IMG/VR virus record: IMGVR_UViG_3300034073_003340 | Span: 248,001 to 312,000 of that record | DNA: 64,000 bases | Strand: one strand, 5' to 3' | In this document: positions 30,160 through 60,102 of the stretch, piece by piece | Position numbering within the stretch: the stretch's first letter is position 1 | Layout: each line of letters starts with the position of its first letter | Notes under the pieces: generated by a model | Databases searched by the model: none | The model's input: the letters and a program-made list of their open reading frames with translations, nothing else | Told to the model about the DNA's origin: nothing | Made by a program: the position numbers and the translations under genes

Positions 30160-30254
30160 GACGGAGACGCCTAATTGGTATGGGCGCTCACTCACATGGG
30201 CAGGCGTATCCAGAGTGAGAGTGTAGTAGGGTTCAAATCCTTACCCCGTCACCA
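30160..30254 (+). tRNA. tRNA-like RNA with expanded anticodon arm (undetermined)
   Basis: GACGG/CCGTC-ACCA acceptor, D arm, GGTTCAAATCC T arm; 7-bp CTCACTC/GAGTGAG stem closing 19 nt. Confidence 0.6.
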
Positions 30255-44006: not shown

Positions 44007-44099
44007 TGGTGGAAGTGCCCGGACTTGAACCGGGATCGTCGCCTAATCTGGGCTTTCGCGAGGTATAAGCTCACCCGCTCTACCTTGAGCTACACTTCC
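44007..44099 (-). tRNA. tRNA-Ile(UAU) with long variable arm
   Basis: GGAAGTG/CACTTCC-ACCA; GTGAG-CTTATAC-CTCGC; GCC/GGC variable stem; 93 nt. Confidence 0.8.
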
Positions 44100-45257: not shown

Positions 45258-45333
45258 TGGTGGCCCATATGGGACTCGAACCCACAACCGACAGATTTTA
45301 GAGATCCCTGCTCTACCATTGAGCTAAAAGGCC
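45258..45333 (-). tRNA. Amber suppressor tRNA (CUA)
   Basis: 76-nt cloverleaf; loop CT-CTA-AA; CCA encoded; one mismatch each in the acceptor and anticodon stems. Confidence 0.8.
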
Positions 45334-51649: not shown

Positions 51650-52505
51650 ATGAAAGGTTGAGAATACACCTTTTACAAAACGTCTTCGAGCATTATCCCT
51701 GGCTTCTGACCAGTTTTCTCTCGATTTCCACTAAGCGTAGCCGAAGCAGTCACTTAGTAACGTTCCAAAGCCGCCAACTTATAGACCGCTGGCATTAGCG
51801 GTGTCCTTACGGGCCTTTCGGTAGTGTCTAGTTACGCCTGGAATCGCTTCCAGTTAAGCGGCCGCTAAGCCACAACATACCCTCTTCTACCAACACTAGT
51901 AGACGTTTGCCCCTACCAGTGTCCCTGTTAGCTTGCGCCCAGGGAATTAGGCTTTTTCAGCCTCGTAAGCGAGTCAGGCTTTCATTTTTTGACAGCTATG
52001 TCTAAAACAGCTATGTTTAACCCATTGCGATGTGCTGACTCAGTAGCTTCAAAGGCTTTTGACCTCCAAAATACTACACACCACGTATCTTTCGCCTTGC
52101 GGGGCTACTTGATCAGTTTTCAAGAACTGTAACACACGGCTGAACCCGTATATTCCAATCCTATCAACTTGCCACTTGCCCTTGGCGCGACCCTCGGACT
52201 GTAGTGACTATCTCTTCCCACTTGGTACTGACCATATTTCGCTGGCGACGTTGGGGTGCGAAACCCATTATCGAGCCATCCGTTGGACCACTCGACGTAT
52301 ACCGCTTTCGCGGAACAGTCATCCTATGGCGTCCTACCTATCTCCGCAACCCGTAAAGGCCCGAAGAGCTATCTTTTGGATAGCAGGGTGAGACTTGCTT
52401 GTTATTGACCTATATTGCTATAGGCGAGACCTATTGGGTTTCAGCCCCTTTCCCTAAGTTGCCCCAGGTTATCTGCTACAAGCAGCAATCTCTAATCTCT
52501 TGAGC
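51650..52505 (-). ncRNA. Large structured ncRNA, GOLLD-like
   Basis: ~855 nt without a credible ORF, between a TTGACA-N17-TACTTT promoter and a terminator at 51620-51649; many GNRA-capped hairpins; GTGGTGTGTAGTATT..CAAAAG and GTGTATTCTCAACC segments recall GOLLD. Confidence 0.7.
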
Positions 52506-55295: not shown

Positions 55296-56324
55296 TTACC
55301 ACTTACATGCGGTCTTCCATCTTGGATCTGAGTAAATCCCCAGAAGGTCATCTTTGAAAGCTGTGAACTCTCTTAGAGACACCAATTGGATTCCTTGGTC
55401 CTTGGAAGGAAAGAGGCGACGGTATACGAGATTTTCGGATATCTTTAGGACATGATGATGCTTTTTGGCAAAGCTTTGGATCTGATTATATGCCCATTGC
55501 TGGTCTGGTCGAAAAAGTTCTTCGGGGATCCATGTCGCCATTTGAAGGGTAACATGACCTTCAACCCCGTCCATGACGTCAGAAAGAGAACTCTTATGGG
55601 GTATGGATTGGATGCCGCCGTGTGTGATCGAATTGAAAAAGCGAATAGATTGTTGATTCCAACCTTCTTCAGAGATACAATATTTGGTAAACCCTATCTT
55701 GCCAAGGATTGCGCCTCCGCTAAACGGTATGATAACGTTCGAGCCTTTGAACTTGGAAAAATACTTTCCGCTTATCATGAATAGAGTTGCGTATTTCCCC
55801 CAGTCTGAAATGCTGTTAGTCAGTAGAGCAATGGGGTCCCTGCCGACTGCGCCTCTTTGAAGCATCCTGTAAAGGGTATGCTGATTGACGATGATATGAG
55901 AGGAGATCACGTCAACATAAAGCTTGCGCTTGCCGATCGCATAATTGATATTGTGTAGCTCAAGAAACTTTTCAAAACGTTCTTCTTGGGATGCCAGTTT
56001 GTCAATACAAGCCATCTCCTTGAAGTCCCAGACAAACTGACTGCTAACATCTAGCACTGGGCCGTTGTCTTCCATGCGACTACGATTTAAAATATGGTTG
56101 AAGGATCCTAGTCTAGACTTGATCTGATTGCTTACCTGGTTTTTGACCTTCTTGAGCTTGACATCTGAGAGGCTAGTATGCCCAGAATAGAAATTCTTGT
56201 CACCGGCCCAGAATATATCCAAGATAGTATCTATCAAGGCCCCTTCTGTTCTCGGTTTCACTAGGCGGCGGATCTCGTCTTTTACAAGACCCCAAGCCAG
56301 CTTGTCATAGTCTTGATCCAACAT
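55296..56324 (-). CDS. Hypothetical protein
   Basis: 342-aa ORF with AGGAGA RBS. Confidence 0.65.
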   Translation of the reverse strand: MLDQDYDKLAWGLVKDEIRRLVKPRTEGALIDTILDIFWAGDKNFYSGHTSLSDVKLKKVKNQVSNQIKSRLGSFNHILNRSRMEDNGPVLDVSSQFVWDFKEMACIDKLASQEERFEKFLELHNINYAIGKRKLYVDVISSHIIVNQHTLYRMLQRGAVGRDPIALLTNSISDWGKYATLFMISGKYFSKFKGSNVIIPFSGGAILGKIGFTKYCISEEGWNQQSIRFFNSITHGGIQSIPHKSSLSDVMDGVEGHVTLQMATWIPEELFRPDQQWAYNQIQSFAKKHHHVLKISENLVYRRLFPSKDQGIQLVSLREFTAFKDDLLGIYSDPRWKTACKW

Positions 56325-56912
56325 TGATCGATCTCCTCAATCTGATCAATAACATGGACTATGTCTTTGTCAATCAGAACAAATAGACAACTAAGGAACC
56401 TTCCCAAGCTGGATATCAATCCATGCCAATTTGGCCAACATTGCTGATTGTTCGTTTGGGAGGAGGGCCTGTAGCTTTGTTTTCTTTTCTCCAAACCCCC
56501 TATCTGAAACCATATGCGAAGCCAACCATGATAGATTTCGCGCTATAATTTCTCTGGATTGTTCAGGGGTAAGCCCAGTCTCGGCATCATTGCCTACCAA
56601 AACCCAACCAGACGCATGATTATTAAGCCATTCATAAAGAAAAGGCAACTCCTTGCGGGCTACGGTGATTTTGGCCGGTATTTTCATATGATTCAGGTTA
56701 CTGGATTTTGAAGAAAAATCAACCAGAAACAACAAGACCCGGTGGAAACCACCGGGTCTTGTCTAGGGACTTTCACCCCATGCGCTCGACCGTCTGTGCT
56801 CTGAGCCGGCGAACCGGTTATCCAAGGGATGGAAGAGCACATCTCATTCCCTTTTATCTACCGAGGTCAACCTATGTCGAGAGGTTGATTTAACTCGATA
56901 GCGACTTCTAAG

Positions 56913-56987
56913 CATCGGGGGATGGGCTCGAACCACCGCCGACCGCAGCTTCACGCCGCAGCGCTCTACCAACTGAGCTACCCCGAT
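56913..56987 (-). tRNA. tRNA-like RNA with abnormal anticodon arm, no encoded CCA
   Basis: ATCGGGG/CCCCGAT acceptor, canonical D arm and T arm; CTGCGGC-GTGAA-GCTGCGG arm. Confidence 0.65.
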
Positions 56988-57096
56988 ATAAGGGGTGGAG
57001 ACTTGCCGGTCTCCACCCCTAGGAGGTGCGTCGCTAGGCTTGCACCGCCTCTGTCACAATGGCTACAATAACTCATAGCCAATGTCAACAGATATT

Positions 57097-57810
57097 TTAG
57101 TCGTCCGACTTGATTCCCACAAAACGTAGGATAAAGAGGAACATATTCAGGAAGTCGAGGTAGAGGTTCAAGGCCCCCATGACCACGATGCGACCCTGTG
57201 TGTCACCGCTCATGCTGGGATCGTAGGCGTCCTTGAGACTCTGCGTATCCCAGGCAGTCAGACCAGCGAAGATCAAAATACCCGCAATACCAATGAACAG
57301 ATTCAAGCCGCTGCTGGGAATGAAAATATTCAAGATCATGAGAGCAATCAGACCAAACAAAGCAAATACCAGAAATGCTCCAATTGGTCCTAGATCACGC
57401 TTGGTGGTGTAGCCGTAGAGGCTACACCCTGCAAAGCCAACCGCACTAGCAAGAAAAGCCATGAGGATAGATCCTCCTGTGTATCGGCTCAAAATCACCG
57501 AAAGTCCCAACCCTTCGAGGACCACAAAGGTCCAATACAAAGTGTGGAGAGTTGTCAGCTTCATGCGCTCAACACCCAGACTCATCGCCAGCACAAGACC
57601 CAACGGGGACAATGCCACCAGCCAGAACAGGAGACCACCCTGCTTTAAAATCTCCAACATGCCACTCGCAGTAGCAAACCATGCTGCGCCTGCGCTGACC
57701 AAGAGACCCATAAGCATCATGTTATAGATGCCCGTCATATAGTTGCGAAGTCCCTGGTCATAGGACACGCTTCGTGAAATTTCCATGTGATCATTCTCCC
57801 TAGGGTTCAC
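57097..57810 (-). CDS. Bax inhibitor-1/YccA family membrane protein
   Basis: DQGLRNYM, YGYTTKRDL, AGLTAWDTQ, GALNLYLDFLNMFLFILR. Confidence 0.93.
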   Translation of the reverse strand: MNPRENDHMEISRSVSYDQGLRNYMTGIYNMMLMGLLVSAGAAWFATASGMLEILKQGGLLFWLVALSPLGLVLAMSLGVERMKLTTLHTLYWTFVVLEGLGLSVILSRYTGGSILMAFLASAVGFAGCSLYGYTTKRDLGPIGAFLVFALFGLIALMILNIFIPSSGLNLFIGIAGILIFAGLTAWDTQSLKDAYDPSMSGDTQGRIVVMGALNLYLDFLNMFLFILRFVGIKSDD

Positions 57811-57846: not shown

Positions 57847-59043
57847 TTACTTGATGAGACTCTGAATCTCCATGAGCAGGAGAGCTGGCGTAATCTCTTC
57901 AGCATGTTGTTTTCCTAGGCGTCGTAATGAAACCACGCCTTTTTCAACATCACGTTGACCAATCACTACGATCCAGTTGCGCTTCATCTCACTATGTTCT
58001 TTTATCTTTTGTTTTAGATTCTCATCTCGGTCGTCGTAAATCACGCGAGCACCTTGGACCTGTGCCAAATCTCTAAAGGCCTCTGATGCTTTTTCTCCGC
58101 CTGGTAACGGTATCACCACTACATTCTCAGGTGAAAGCCAGAACGGCAGATTGCCTTCATAGTTTTCAAGCAATATACCAATAAAGCGTTCAAAAGAGCC
58201 GAGAATAGCGCGATGTAACATAACAGGTCGCTGACGACTACCATCTGCGGCCACATATTCAGCCTCTAGGCGTTCTGGTAATACCATATCCAATTGGATC
58301 GTGCCGCATTGCCATTGACGTCCTTTGAGATCCTTGAGAGCAAATTCTAGTTTGGGACCGTAGAATGCCCCTTCGCCTTTCTGAATGACAAAGTCCAGGC
58401 CAGCAGCTTTGACAGCTTCTGAAAGATCGTGCTCTGCTTTGTTCCAGTCTTCTTCGGAACCAGCTCGCACCGCTGGGCGGGTCGATAGGCCGACCACAAC
58501 ATCAGAGAACCCAAAGTCATTATACACCTCCTTTAGCAAGAGGATGAAAGACTTTACCTCATCAACTACCTGCTCAGGCGCGCAAAATATATGCGCATCG
58601 TCTTGCGTAAACTGTCGAACTCTCATGATTCCATGTAGAGCGCCACTTGGTTCACTGCGATGACAACAGCCAAACTCTGCCAAGCGAATTGGAAGTTGTC
58701 TATATGAAACTACACCACTGTTGAATATCTGGACATGACCAGGACAGTTCATTGGCTTAATCGCAAACTGCCTTTGGTCATCATCTAGAACATACATATG
58801 ATCTTGGAACTTCTCCCAATGACCAGACTTCTCCCATAGGGATTTATCAACCAGCTGCGGCGTCTTGACCTCTTGGTAGCCATCACGTCTGAGTTTTGAT
58901 CGTATATACTCTTCAATAATCCTGAAGAGTTCATAGCCCCGAGGATGCCAAAATACTGACCCCGCGGCATCATCCTGGAGATGAAAAAGTTTGAGGTCAC
59001 GACCAAGACGACGATGGTCGGAATTAGAAAGTTGAATATCCAT
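57847..59043 (-). CDS. thrS: Threonyl-tRNA synthetase lacking N-terminal TGS/editing domains
   Basis: DHRRLG, KPMNCPGH, MRVRQFTQDDAH, GAFYGPK, QCGTIQLD, HRAILGSFERF; 398 aa. Confidence 0.97.
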   Translation of the reverse strand: MDIQLSNSDHRRLGRDLKLFHLQDDAAGSVFWHPRGYELFRIIEEYIRSKLRRDGYQEVKTPQLVDKSLWEKSGHWEKFQDHMYVLDDDQRQFAIKPMNCPGHVQIFNSGVVSYRQLPIRLAEFGCCHRSEPSGALHGIMRVRQFTQDDAHIFCAPEQVVDEVKSFILLLKEVYNDFGFSDVVVGLSTRPAVRAGSEEDWNKAEHDLSEAVKAAGLDFVIQKGEGAFYGPKLEFALKDLKGRQWQCGTIQLDMVLPERLEAEYVAADGSRQRPVMLHRAILGSFERFIGILLENYEGNLPFWLSPENVVVIPLPGGEKASEAFRDLAQVQGARVIYDDRDENLKQKIKEHSEMKRNWIVVIGQRDVEKGVVSLRRLGKQHAEEITPALLLMEIQSLIK

Positions 59044-59929: not shown

Positions 59930-60065
59930 TGCGACGGGCAAAGTGGCGTCTATGGGGGTTGCCTGTTGCTCTACCAACTGAGCTATTTTGCCGTTTTAGC
60001 AGCAAAAGTAGGATTCGAACCTACGGCCTTCTGGTTTGATAATCCACAAACTACGGCCCGTCGCA
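59930..60065 (-). ncRNA. Circularly permuted tRNA mimic, YrlA/Y RNA-like (copy 1)
   Basis: Terminal stem GCGACGGGC/GCCCGTCGC; T arm precedes a loop-closed acceptor stem, then the D arm AGCTCAGTTGGTAGAGC. Confidence 0.8.
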
Positions 60066-60102
60066 TCTTCGTTATGGCGTAATTACGCCATAGGATCAAG
60101 TA

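What the first reader, a model, noticed from the sequence alone, without database searches (positions are those of the whole stretch)
56731..57090. Non-coding transcription unit: hairpins, tRNA-like RNA and a downstream pseudoknot
Seen (minus strand): a TTGACA promoter at ~57060-57090, two strong hairpins (56991-57051), then a tRNA-like RNA with a 7-bp anticodon stem, 5-nt loop and no CCA. About 140 nt follow, with TGTGCTCT/AGAGCACA enclosing TCC-ATCCCTT-GGA whose loop can pair with the upstream AAGGGA, plus a CCGG-UUCG-CCGG hairpin and a terminator. Inference: a composite ncRNA or a ribozyme-like element; the fit to the HDV/theta ribozyme consensus is poor.
Basis: partly seen in the sequence, partly recalled or inferred. 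Interest (0 to 1): 0.6.

Follow-up and report, generated by a model that had tools for sequence, protein, structure and literature searches.

The report
Non-decoding tRNA-like RNA of huge phages
A 436-kb phage and its relatives carry one conserved small gene for an RNA that has the full shape of a tRNA but a sealed, non-decoding "anticodon" arm, flanked by swappable structured RNA modules; it is a real family of noncoding RNA not in Rfam, and its job is still unknown.

Summary
The window lies in a complete 435,856-bp phage genome. The core is a 75-nt cloverleaf (56987..56913) with a normal acceptor stem, D arm and T arm. Its anticodon arm is a 7-bp helix capped by an invariant GUGAA pentaloop. 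I found it in 15 loci (13 distinct sequences) from related huge-phage contigs, always between a Bax-inhibitor-1 gene and an orphan 342-aa gene, and once per genome. Six of the seven arm pairs covary. A covariance model scores members at 76-103 bits and ordinary tRNAs at 60 or less. The flanks are modular: a two-hairpin leader is always present, and the 140-nt 3' domain occurs in 7 loci. Its two candidate pseudoknots are invariant, so covariation cannot test them. It matches no Rfam family and lacks P3 and P1.1, so it is not HDV-like or theta. My best reading is a non-decoding tRNA mimic matured by tRNA-processing enzymes, acting as a decoy or adaptor. That function is inferred. No read data could be obtained.

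The parts
57060..57088 (-). Promoter-like element: TTGACA (57088..57083), 17-nt spacer, TAGCCA (57065..57060)
   Evidence: Read directly. TTGAC(N) with 17-nt spacing and TA at the -10 site is kept in 15 loci. Not listed by the consensus scan because the -10 is weak. Start site not mapped.
57021..57050 (-). Leader hairpin 1: outer 3-bp helix, GGUGC/GCACC stem, and a conserved loop reading AAGC..AGCGAC
   Evidence: Fold results. The motif GTGCAAGC-N2-4-AGCGACGCAC is kept in 11 of 15 loci. A different hairpin takes its place in L084/L107, L085 and L105.
56991..57020 (-). Leader hairpin 2: G-rich 12-bp stem (GGGGUGGAG../..CUCCACCCC), followed by the 3-nt linker UAU before the tRNA-like +1
   Evidence: Fold results. 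Present in every member, with 28-60 nt of variable sequence and length.
56913..56987 (-). tRNA-like core, 75 nt: A1-U72 acceptor stem, D arm with G18G19, 5-nt variable loop, T arm with GGUUCGAGC, discriminator G73. C74 follows at 56912.
   Evidence: ARAGORN and Rfam tRNA 44.1 bits. Model R1 gives 103 bits here and 60 or less for true tRNAs. 99.3% of cells paired and 9 covarying pairs.
56943..56961 (-). Sealed 'anticodon' arm: 7-bp stem CUGCGGC/GCUGCGG with the invariant pentaloop GUGAA (56954..56950)
   Evidence: 6 of 7 pairs show compensatory changes. There are 9 distinct stems in 15 loci, and the loop never changes.
56764..56906 (-). 3' domain M3, about 143 nt. Helices: Pa (56898..56894 with 56865..56861), Pb (56888..56883 with 56872..56867), long-range P2 (56841..56834 with 56802..56795), P4 CCGG-UUCG-CCGG (56817..56806), P5 (56779..56766). 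Candidate pseudoknots: AAGGGA (56853..56848) with UCCCUU (56829..56824), and CUCGAC (56881..56876) with GUCGAG (56790..56785).
   Evidence: Alignment A4 of 7 loci: 96.7% paired and 12 pairs with compensatory changes. Pa, Pb, P2, P4 and P5 covary; both pseudoknots are invariant. Single copy in the genome. No Rfam family.
56731..56763 (-). Intrinsic terminator: 15-pair stem followed by a U-rich tail. A further promoter-like site (TTGATT-17-TAACCT) for the next gene comes after it.
   Evidence: Terminator scan. Every relative also has a terminator hairpin followed by CTGGTTGAC(A), with or without M3.

Best explanation
This is a dedicated noncoding-RNA transcription unit of a clade of huge phages. 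Its conserved core is a tRNA mimic that cannot decode.

What is shown: the RNA keeps every element of the tRNA L-shape. It has a 7-bp acceptor stem, U8, A14, G15:C48, G18G19, G46 and a GGUUCGA T loop. Its anticodon arm is replaced by a 7-bp helix closed by an invariant GUGAA pentaloop.

What is inferred: the transcript starts at the conserved TTGAC(N) promoter. RNase P cuts after the two-hairpin leader. The 3' end is trimmed and completed to CCA by the host enzyme or by the phage's own CCA-adding-type enzyme. The mature RNA of about 78 nt then binds a factor that reads whole-tRNA shape, with GUGAA as a sequence-specific contact. It stays out of translation, so it acts as a decoy or adaptor. 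The most plausible target is a tRNA-directed host nuclease or toxin, or a tRNA-handling enzyme.

The leader hairpins and the optional pseudoknotted 3' domain (M3) are separate accessory RNA modules that share the transcript.
For: - Family and conservation: 15 loci (13 distinct sequences) from IMG/VR, JGI, ENA, Logan and NCBI contigs hold it, always between the Bax1-I gene and the orphan 342-aa gene. There is one copy per genome in three complete 436-465 kb genomes.
- Structure: 99.3% of cells paired. Nine pairs show compensatory change, including 6 of 7 in the anticodon arm. The GUGAA loop is invariant over 9 distinct stems.
- Separation from true tRNAs: R1 scores members at 76-103 bits and tRNAs at 60 or less.
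- Processing signals: U at -1 in 11 of 13 sequences. G73 and C74 are invariant, and CCA is encoded in 5 of 15 loci. By contrast most of the phage's 59 tRNAs encode CCA. The phage encodes a PolyA_pol/CCA-adding-type enzyme.
- Full tRNA shape: invariant D-arm, variable-loop and T-loop tertiary nucleotides argue for recognition of the whole tRNA, not just an acceptor/T minihelix.
- Non-decoding: a published review of non-canonical natural tRNAs reports 6-bp anticodon stems, and the passages retrieved describe only a 7-nt loop (PMC7609411).
Against:
- No partner has been identified. The conserved neighbour (342 aa) has no family or fold match.
- The -10 element is weak, and the unit could be read through from the upstream gene.
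- Decoy function is inference by exclusion.
- The constant presence of flanking structured modules fits a processing-handle role equally well.
Confidence: 0.5

Rival explanations
1. Processing handle (punctuation). The tRNA-like fold exists mainly to recruit RNase P and 3' tRNA-processing nucleases, so that the flanking functional RNAs (the leader hairpin RNA and the M3 domain) are released with exact ends. MALAT1/mascRNA and the T4 species 2/species 1 precursor work this way. On this view the tRNA-like piece is a by-product.
For: Structured modules always flank the core, and a two-hairpin leader is kept even where its sequence is replaced. M3 is a well-supported structured RNA in its own right. 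U(-1), G73 and C74 fit RNase P recognition.
Against: A handle needs only the acceptor/T minihelix. Here the D arm, the core tertiary nucleotides and above all the GUGAA loop are invariant. M3 is absent from 8 of 15 loci. In L101/L103 a second promoter separates the canonical leader from the core. Encoded CCA in 5 loci suggests the core's own 3' end matters.
Confidence: 0.2
2. The 3' domain M3 is a self-cleaving ribozyme, either a divergent HDV-like/theta analogue or a new class. It cuts the transcript to free itself or to shape the 3' trailer of the tRNA-like RNA.
For: The topology is pseudoknotted: strand order P1-like, P2, P1', P4 hairpin, short junction, P2'. Junction nucleotides are invariant, and the first nucleotide of the J4/2-like junction is C in 6 of 7 loci. 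Theta ribozymes do process phage tRNA 3' ends (PMC10879173).
Against: Only 4-6 nt lie between the P2 5' strand and the P1 3' strand, so P3, L3 and P1.1 cannot form. The P1-like helix starts with A-U, not G.U. L005 has U at the 'catalytic' position. In L101(=L102)/L103/L106/L109 a hairpin and about 50 nt separate M3 from the tRNA-like end, whereas theta ribozymes lie within 5 nt. No ribozyme model matches at E up to 10.
Confidence: 0.1
3. M3 is a ligand- or protein-sensing regulatory leader (riboswitch-like) that controls the terminator at 56763..56731, and so controls read-through into the downstream genes.
For: Ornate fold with invariant junctions directly followed by an intrinsic terminator. 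The downstream genes are on the same strand.
Against: A conserved promoter-like CTGGTTGAC(A) follows the terminator with or without M3. The same genes lie downstream in loci that lack M3. I found no conserved anti-terminator alternative.
Confidence: 0.1
4. It is a working tRNA (ARAGORN's 'Ser UGA', or a His-like GUG at positions 34-36) with an odd loop, or a decaying tRNA pseudogene.
For: ARAGORN and Rfam both call it tRNA. Counted from the 5' side, GUG falls at positions 34-36.
Against: Positions 32:40 and 33:39 are base-paired with covariation, which leaves a 5-nt loop without U33. There is no long variable arm as in tRNA-Ser, and no G-1/C73 as in tRNA-His. The sequence is conserved, with compensatory changes, across phages whose neighbouring protein is only 50% identical, which excludes a pseudogene.
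Confidence: 0.03
5. It is the Y-RNA-type partner of the phage's Ro60 (TROVE) protein.
For: The phage and two complete relatives encode TROVE proteins. There is a weak Rfam YrlA match of 17.8 bits.
Against: There is no closing stem formed by the 5' and 3' ends, and no permuted tRNA module. A much better YrlA-like RNA lies 3 kb away at 59930..60066 (30 bits, with covarying helices).
Confidence: 0.04

Closest known systems
Phage T4 stable RNAs species 1 and 2 (rnaC, rnaD)
   Same: Small stable RNAs of unknown function encoded beside a phage tRNA cluster (annotation). rnaC ends in a tRNA-type T arm (CCGGGUUCGAAUCCCGG) with an acceptor-like closing stem. From my own knowledge, its dimeric precursor is a classic RNase P substrate.
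   Different: No homology: R1 finds only the true T4 tRNAs. rnaC replaces the D and anticodon arms with long hairpins. The RNA here is a complete cloverleaf with only the anticodon loop sealed.
Bacterial and phage Y RNAs of the YrlA type (Rfam RF02553)
   Same: tRNA mimicry by a noncoding RNA, with identical D-arm and T-loop consensus. The same phage carries a TROVE gene and a YrlA-like RNA.
   Different: YrlA is a permuted tRNA module opened at the anticodon side and closed by a Ro-binding stem. This RNA is open at the acceptor end and closed at the anticodon end. It scores 17.8 bits against a gathering score of 69.
mascRNA/MALAT1 and gammaherpesvirus TMER tRNA-like units
   Same: A tRNA-like fold embedded in a longer noncoding transcript next to other structured RNAs, expected to be cut out by RNase P and RNase Z and to be non-decoding (own knowledge; PMC8457004 and PMC4337559 listed).
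   Different: Those are eukaryotic or viral nuclear systems with degenerate tRNA cores. Here the full set of tertiary nucleotides is invariant, and the loop is a fixed pentaloop.
HDV-like theta ribozymes next to phage tRNAs (PMC10879173)
   Same: A pseudoknotted RNA lies downstream of a phage tRNA-type gene. M3 shares the strand order P1, P2, P1', P4, J4/2, P2' and usually has C at the start of the last junction.
   Different: M3 has no P3/L3/P1.1 and no G.U at the start of P1. It has extra Pa/Pb and P5 domains and is about 143 nt, against about 50-60 nt from my own recollection. It is usually not adjacent to the tRNA-like 3' end, and no Rfam ribozyme model matches.
GNRA-like pentaloops such as lambda and P22 boxB (own knowledge)
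   Same: GUGAA fits the G-N-R-N-A pattern of pentaloops that fold like GNRA tetraloops and are read by a specific partner.
   Different: The loop here caps the anticodon arm of a tRNA body, not a nut-site hairpin. No N-like partner is identified. This is a resemblance only and was not tested.

Membership tests
tRNA (decoding) | Cloverleaf with 7-bp acceptor stem, D arm with G18G19, and T arm with GTTCRA | tested here: met
   Rfam tRNA 44.1 bits against a gathering score of 29; ARAGORN call; all helices 97.6-100% paired across the 7 loci aligned.
tRNA (decoding) | 5-bp (rarely 6-bp) anticodon stem with a 7-nt loop carrying U33 and an anticodon | tested here: not met
   7 covarying pairs close an invariant 5-nt loop GUGAA. 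Pairs 32:40 and 33:39 are kept through changes. The review PMC7609411 reports at most 6-bp anticodon stems, and only a 7-nt loop in the passages retrieved.
tRNA (decoding) | 3' CCA end and aminoacylation | tested here: inconclusive
   CCA is encoded in 5 of 15 loci and C74 is invariant. The window copy reads G-CUU. The phage has a CCA-adding-type enzyme. Charging cannot be tested with these tools.
HDV-like / theta ribozyme (for the 3' domain M3) | Nested double pseudoknot with P1, P1.1, P2, P3 and P4 | tested here: not met
   P1-like, P2 and P4 can be drawn, but only 4-6 nt lie where P3/L3 should be, so P3 and P1.1 are impossible.
HDV-like / theta ribozyme (for the 3' domain M3) | Catalytic C at the first position of J4/2; G1.U wobble at the cleavage site | tested here: inconclusive
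   C in 6 of 7 loci and U in L005. The P1-like helix begins with A-U in all 7.
HDV-like / theta ribozyme (for the 3' domain M3) | Cleavage site within about 5 nt of the tRNA 3' end; match to ribozyme covariance models | tested here: not met
   M3 starts 6-10 nt after G73 in the window and L005, but 41-50 nt after it, behind a hairpin, in L101, L103, L105, L106 and L109. No ribozyme family appears at E up to 10.
Y RNA / YrlA | 5' and 3' ends form the Ro-binding stem; tRNA-like module permuted in the order T arm, acceptor hairpin, D arm | tested here: not met
   17.8 bits against a gathering score of 69, partial model only. The topology is the opposite. A separate RNA at 59930..60066 does have that topology.
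tmRNA | tRNA-like domain formed by the two ends, plus a tag reading frame and pseudoknots | tested here: not met
   ARAGORN finds no tmRNA in the window or the genome. The anticodon arm is closed, not extended.
RNase P / RNase Z-processed tRNA-like ncRNA (mascRNA type) | Precise endonucleolytic release at +1 and after the discriminator | not testable with these tools
   Only indirect signs are available: U(-1) in 11 of 13 sequences, invariant G73 and C74, and a 3-6 nt single-stranded linker.

The most novel reading that the evidence does not exclude
The locus holds two new RNA classes. The first is a sealed-anticodon tRNA mimic that huge phages use as a non-cleavable, non-decoding decoy or adaptor against a tRNA-directed host factor, with GUGAA as the recognition tip. 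The second is M3, a new ornate doubly pseudoknotted RNA that is either a new self-cleaving ribozyme class or a ligand-binding aptamer.
Probability: 0.2. Interest if true: 0.85.

Novelty: new variant of a known kind. Interest (0 to 1): 0.62.

Why it matters
Huge phages carry large tRNA sets, aminoacyl-tRNA synthetases, GOLLD and Y-like RNAs whose roles are largely unknown. This locus adds a cleanly defined, covariation-supported tRNA mimic whose only change from a real tRNA is a sealed anticodon arm with an invariant loop. That design cannot decode, so it points to tRNA-shape recognition outside translation, such as defence or counter-defence, processing, or enzyme sequestration. It gives a small, testable RNA of about 76 nt with clear mutational predictions. 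The 3' domain M3 is a compact candidate for a new structured-RNA class: five covarying helices and invariant junctions. The modular way these RNAs are shuffled around the core also shows how phage RNA islands evolve.

Tried and rejected
- **Rfam:** searched at gathering and at E up to 10 on the window region and on two relatives. Only tRNA matched. The weak YrlA, SSRC10, small-SRP and miRNA hits are below threshold and inconsistent between loci.
- **tmRNA:** none found.
- **BLAST against 50,697 phage records:** only the D and T arms of ordinary tRNAs matched.
- **Pattern scans:** IMG/VR gave only the clade itself plus one ordinary tRNA-His/Phe locus, L082. The metagenome scan added L084 and L085. 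The genome-contig scan gave only ordinary tRNAs in Nonomuraea and in MAGs, so there is no sign of a bacterial source.
- **Link to the adjacent truncated ThrRS:** rejected. ThrRS is absent from the locus in several members, and, from my own knowledge, the acceptor pairs do not match the tRNA-Thr identity elements.
- **Y-RNA role:** rejected (see the rival explanations).
- **hp1 loop (AGCGAC) pairing with the M3 5' end (GUCGCU):** complementary in the window, but the two elements do not co-occur consistently (L105 has M3 without hp1; L006-L008 and L104 have hp1 without M3). Dropped.
- **Alternative M3 pairings:** 5' GGUCG with the Pb loop, 5' CGCUC with GAGCG, and a local hairpin or AUCC/GGAU mini-hairpin were tabulated. 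They are invariant or partly broken, so they stay undecided.
- **Neighbour protein dn342 (P0001):** no Pfam, PHROG or NCBIfam hit and no PDB sequence hit. The AF2 model has pLDDT 86 but Foldseek found no match below E 0.003, and VIA-align gave Z of 3.7 or less. The structure atlas returned only hypothetical proteins. It gives no clue.
- **T4 rnaC/rnaD:** analogous, not homologous.
- **The look-up of sequencing runs:** I made no further attempt, so no read or transcript evidence was obtained.

Full report
**Context.** The window is bases 248001-312000 of a 435,856-bp virus record with direct terminal repeats, rated complete. It is a huge phage. ARAGORN finds 59 tRNA genes in the genome, most of them in one minus-strand array just downstream of the window. 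The window also holds a GOLLD RNA (164 bits) and a truncated threonyl-tRNA synthetase. The finding lies at the edge of this RNA-rich region. It sits between a Bax-inhibitor-1 family gene (57810..57097, Pfam Bax1-I E 8e-53) and two genes of unknown function.

**Observation check.**
- Promoter: TTGACA at 57088..57083, a 17-nt spacer, then TAGCCA at 57065..57060.
- Hairpin 1: 57050..57021.
- Hairpin 2: 57020..56991.
- Cloverleaf: 56987..56913.
- 3' domain: 56906..56764.
- Terminator: a 15-pair stem at 56763..56731.

ARAGORN labels the cloverleaf 'Ser tga', and Rfam's tRNA model gives 44.1 bits. The anticodon arm is CUGCGGC-GUGAA-GCUGCGG, and the 3' end reads G73-CUU with no CCA. The 336-nt stretch folds far better than shuffles (z = -5.6). 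One caveat applies. The -10 hexamer is far from consensus, so the simple promoter scan missed the site. No terminator separates the unit from the upstream gene, so the transcription start is inferred.

**Relatives.**
- Searching with the upstream Bax1-I protein gave four related phage contigs (L005-L008, 74-95% protein identity). All have the same arrangement downstream of the gene.
- A spacing-specific DNA pattern for the tRNA-like core found only these four contigs in IMG/VR, plus one ordinary tRNA locus.
- The same pattern found two more members in JGI metagenomes (L084, L085).
- In 185,579 species genomes it found only ordinary tRNAs.
- The downstream 342-aa orphan protein (P0001) has homologues in ENA, Logan and NCBI contigs. 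Every contig I fetched carries the RNA between the Bax1-I gene and that orphan gene.

In all there are 15 loci and 13 distinct sequences. The Bax1-I protein drops to 50% identity in the most distant of the loci compared.

**The core is a conserved, non-decoding tRNA mimic.**
- On a 7-sequence alignment, 99.3% of cells form standard pairs. Nine pairs show compensatory double changes, and no shuffle or slid register comes close.
- The anticodon-arm helix has 7 pairs, and 6 of them covary. Across the 15 loci there are 9 different stems, but the loop is always GUGAA.
- Positions 32:40 and 33:39, which are unpaired in every decoding tRNA, are paired here. There is therefore no 7-nt loop, no U33 and no presentable anticodon.
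- A review of natural non-canonical tRNAs reports at most 6-bp stems, and only a 7-nt loop in the passages retrieved (PMC7609411).
- The rest of the molecule keeps the nucleotides that build the L-shape: U8, A14, G15 with C48, G18G19, G26, G46 and the GGUUCGA T loop. All are invariant.
- A covariance model (R1) scores members at 76-103 bits and true tRNAs at 60 or less.
- Each of three complete genomes (436-465 kb) and two partial ones has exactly one copy.
- A pseudogene is excluded by the compensatory changes.

**Signs of tRNA-type maturation (inferred).**
- A single-stranded linker of 3-6 nt follows hairpin 2.
- The nucleotide at -1 is U in 11 of 13 sequences.
- G73 and C74 are invariant. 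CCA is encoded in 5 loci, while the others read CU, CC or CG after G73.
- Most of the phage's true tRNAs encode CCA.
- The phage encodes a PolyA_pol/CCA-adding-type enzyme (118 bits).

From established knowledge, U(-1) and the 3' RCC(A) end are contacts for bacterial RNase P RNA. No cleavage has been shown.

**The unit is modular.**
- **Leader (M1).** It is always two adjacent hairpins. In 11 of 15 loci the first hairpin carries the motif GTGCAAGC-N2-4-AGCGACGCAC. In L084/L107, L085 and L105 a different hairpin replaces it. Hairpin 2 varies from 28 to 60 nt.
- **Extra promoter.** In L101 and L103 the canonical leader has its own promoter. A second TTGACG-17-TATAAG promoter with a new two-hairpin leader precedes the core.
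- **3' side.** In L006 and L008 the core runs straight into a terminator. L007 and L104 share a different 60-nt insert.
- **3' domain (M3).** In five of them a further hairpin separates it from the core.

**The 3' domain M3.** On the 7-sequence alignment A4, a structure with five helices and two pseudoknots gives 96.7% paired cells and 12 pairs with compensatory changes. Slid registers give 23-59% paired.
- P4 reads CCGG-UUCG-CCGG in the window and takes GCAA, GAAA, GAGA, UACG or GAUA loops elsewhere.
- P5 closes a loop containing GAAA or GGAA.
Covariation therefore cannot judge them.
- The junctions are also invariant: GGUAG-UAAAAGGGA, CCCUUGGAU, CAGACG-UCGAGCGCA and GGUG-AAGUCC. That is the usual signature of a functional tertiary core.
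- M3 is single-copy in the genome. In IMG/VR it occurs only in this clade.

**Is M3 an HDV-like or theta ribozyme?** The strand order matches the HDV layout: P1-like, P2, P1', hairpin, short junction, P2'. The junction begins with C in 6 of 7 loci. Against this:
- Only 4-6 nt lie where P3, L3 and P1.1 must form.
- The P1-like helix starts with A-U rather than G.U.
- L005 has U at the 'catalytic' position.
- Theta ribozymes lie within 5 nt of the tRNA end (PMC10879173). M3 usually does not.
- No ribozyme model matches in three loci at E up to 10.

I therefore do not file M3 as HDV-like. Whether it cleaves itself, binds a ligand or binds a protein is open.

**Mechanism.** What is shown is a conserved, single-copy gene for a complete tRNA body with a sealed arm and an invariant tip, embedded in a modular noncoding transcript. 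I infer the rest. The RNA is matured like a tRNA. It then acts through recognition of its whole tRNA shape while being unable to decode. The invariant GUGAA serves as a specific contact; from my own knowledge it fits the G-N-R-N-A pattern of GNRA-like pentaloops. A decoy or adaptor for a tRNA-directed factor fits best.

The main rival is a pure processing handle for the flanking RNAs. That would not need the D arm, the core tertiary nucleotides or a fixed loop, and M3 is often absent. I put about 0.85 on 'real, conserved, non-decoding tRNA-like ncRNA'. I put about 0.5 on the maturation-plus-binding model as a whole. A specific anti-defence decoy role gets only about 0.2.

**Comparison with known systems.**
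- The nearest analogue is phage T4's species 1 and 2 stable RNAs beside its tRNA cluster. rnaC ends in a tRNA T arm but shares no homology and has a different architecture.
- YrlA-type Y RNAs are permuted the other way round. The phage has its own candidate at 59930..60066, with covarying helices, and TROVE genes occur in all three complete genomes.
- mascRNA and TMER-type units are functional analogues for processing.

The sealed-anticodon design with an invariant pentaloop was not in Rfam 15 and did not turn up in my literature searches. I rate it a new variant of a known kind (tRNA-mimic ncRNA). M3 is possibly a new motif class.

**Limits.** There are only 13 distinct sequences from one phage clade. 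The pseudoknots and all functional steps are untested.

Noticed in passing
window 59930..60066 (minus strand): Candidate Y-RNA-like (YrlA-type) RNA. A 9-bp closing stem GCGACGGGC/GCCCGUCGC encloses a T arm, an acceptor-like hairpin and a D arm in permuted order. Rfam YrlA gives 30 bits (gathering score 69). It is conserved in L005, L006, L084 and L106, with partial similarity in L007, and 13 pairs covary. The phage and two complete relatives encode TROVE/Ro60-like proteins about 290 kb away (G000:C1:14040-14987)..
   Followed up: partly
window 51655..52084 (minus strand): GOLLD RNA, 164 bits, full-length match above the gathering score. It lies about 5 kb from the finding, in the same RNA-rich region.
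   Followed up: no
window 30160..30251 (plus strand): A second odd tRNA-like sequence. It has acceptor, D and T arms and an encoded CCA, but a 7-bp 'anticodon' stem (CTCACTC/GAGTGAG) closes a loop of about 21 nt. R1 gives 23 bits. ARAGORN and Rfam do not call it. It may be an intron-bearing or another non-decoding tRNA-like RNA.
   Followed up: no
window 45258..45333 (minus strand) and G000:C1:99130-99204: Two tRNAs with anticodon CUA (ARAGORN labels them 'Pyl'), which look like amber suppressors. Whether the phage recodes TAG was not examined. There is also a 93-nt tRNA-Ile(UAU) at 44007..44099.
   Followed up: no
window 57847..59043 (minus strand): A 398-aa threonyl-tRNA synthetase holding only the catalytic and anticodon-binding domains (TIGR00418, 474 bits, profile positions 169-562). 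The N-terminal editing and TGS part is missing. It is syntenic with the RNA in some relatives but not all.
   Followed up: partly
window 55296..56324 (minus strand), protein P0001: An orphan 342-aa protein always found downstream of the RNA, often followed by a small GerE/sigma-70 region-4-like protein in relatives. The AlphaFold model is confident (pLDDT 86, pTM 0.86), but there is no Pfam, PHROG or PDB sequence match and no convincing fold match (best VIA-align Z 3.7)..
   Followed up: yes
L106:2561-2611 (also L006, L105, L109); not in the window's own hairpin 2: The apex of leader hairpin 2 (..CAGAGUC-GGAA-GAC-AGCA..) weakly resembles SRP RNA domain IV (Rfam bacterial small SRP 19.7 bits, gathering score 40, E 0.17). 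This may be chance.
   Followed up: no
G000:C1:380474-380839 (outside the window): The phage encodes a 388-aa PolyA_pol family protein (CCA-adding enzyme or poly(A) polymerase type, 118 bits).
   Followed up: no
L101:1100-1350 and L103:1100-1350: In these relatives the canonical leader hairpins have their own promoter. A second promoter with a new two-hairpin leader of about 95 nt precedes the tRNA-like core, which there has an encoded CCA followed by an extra hairpin.
   Followed up: partly
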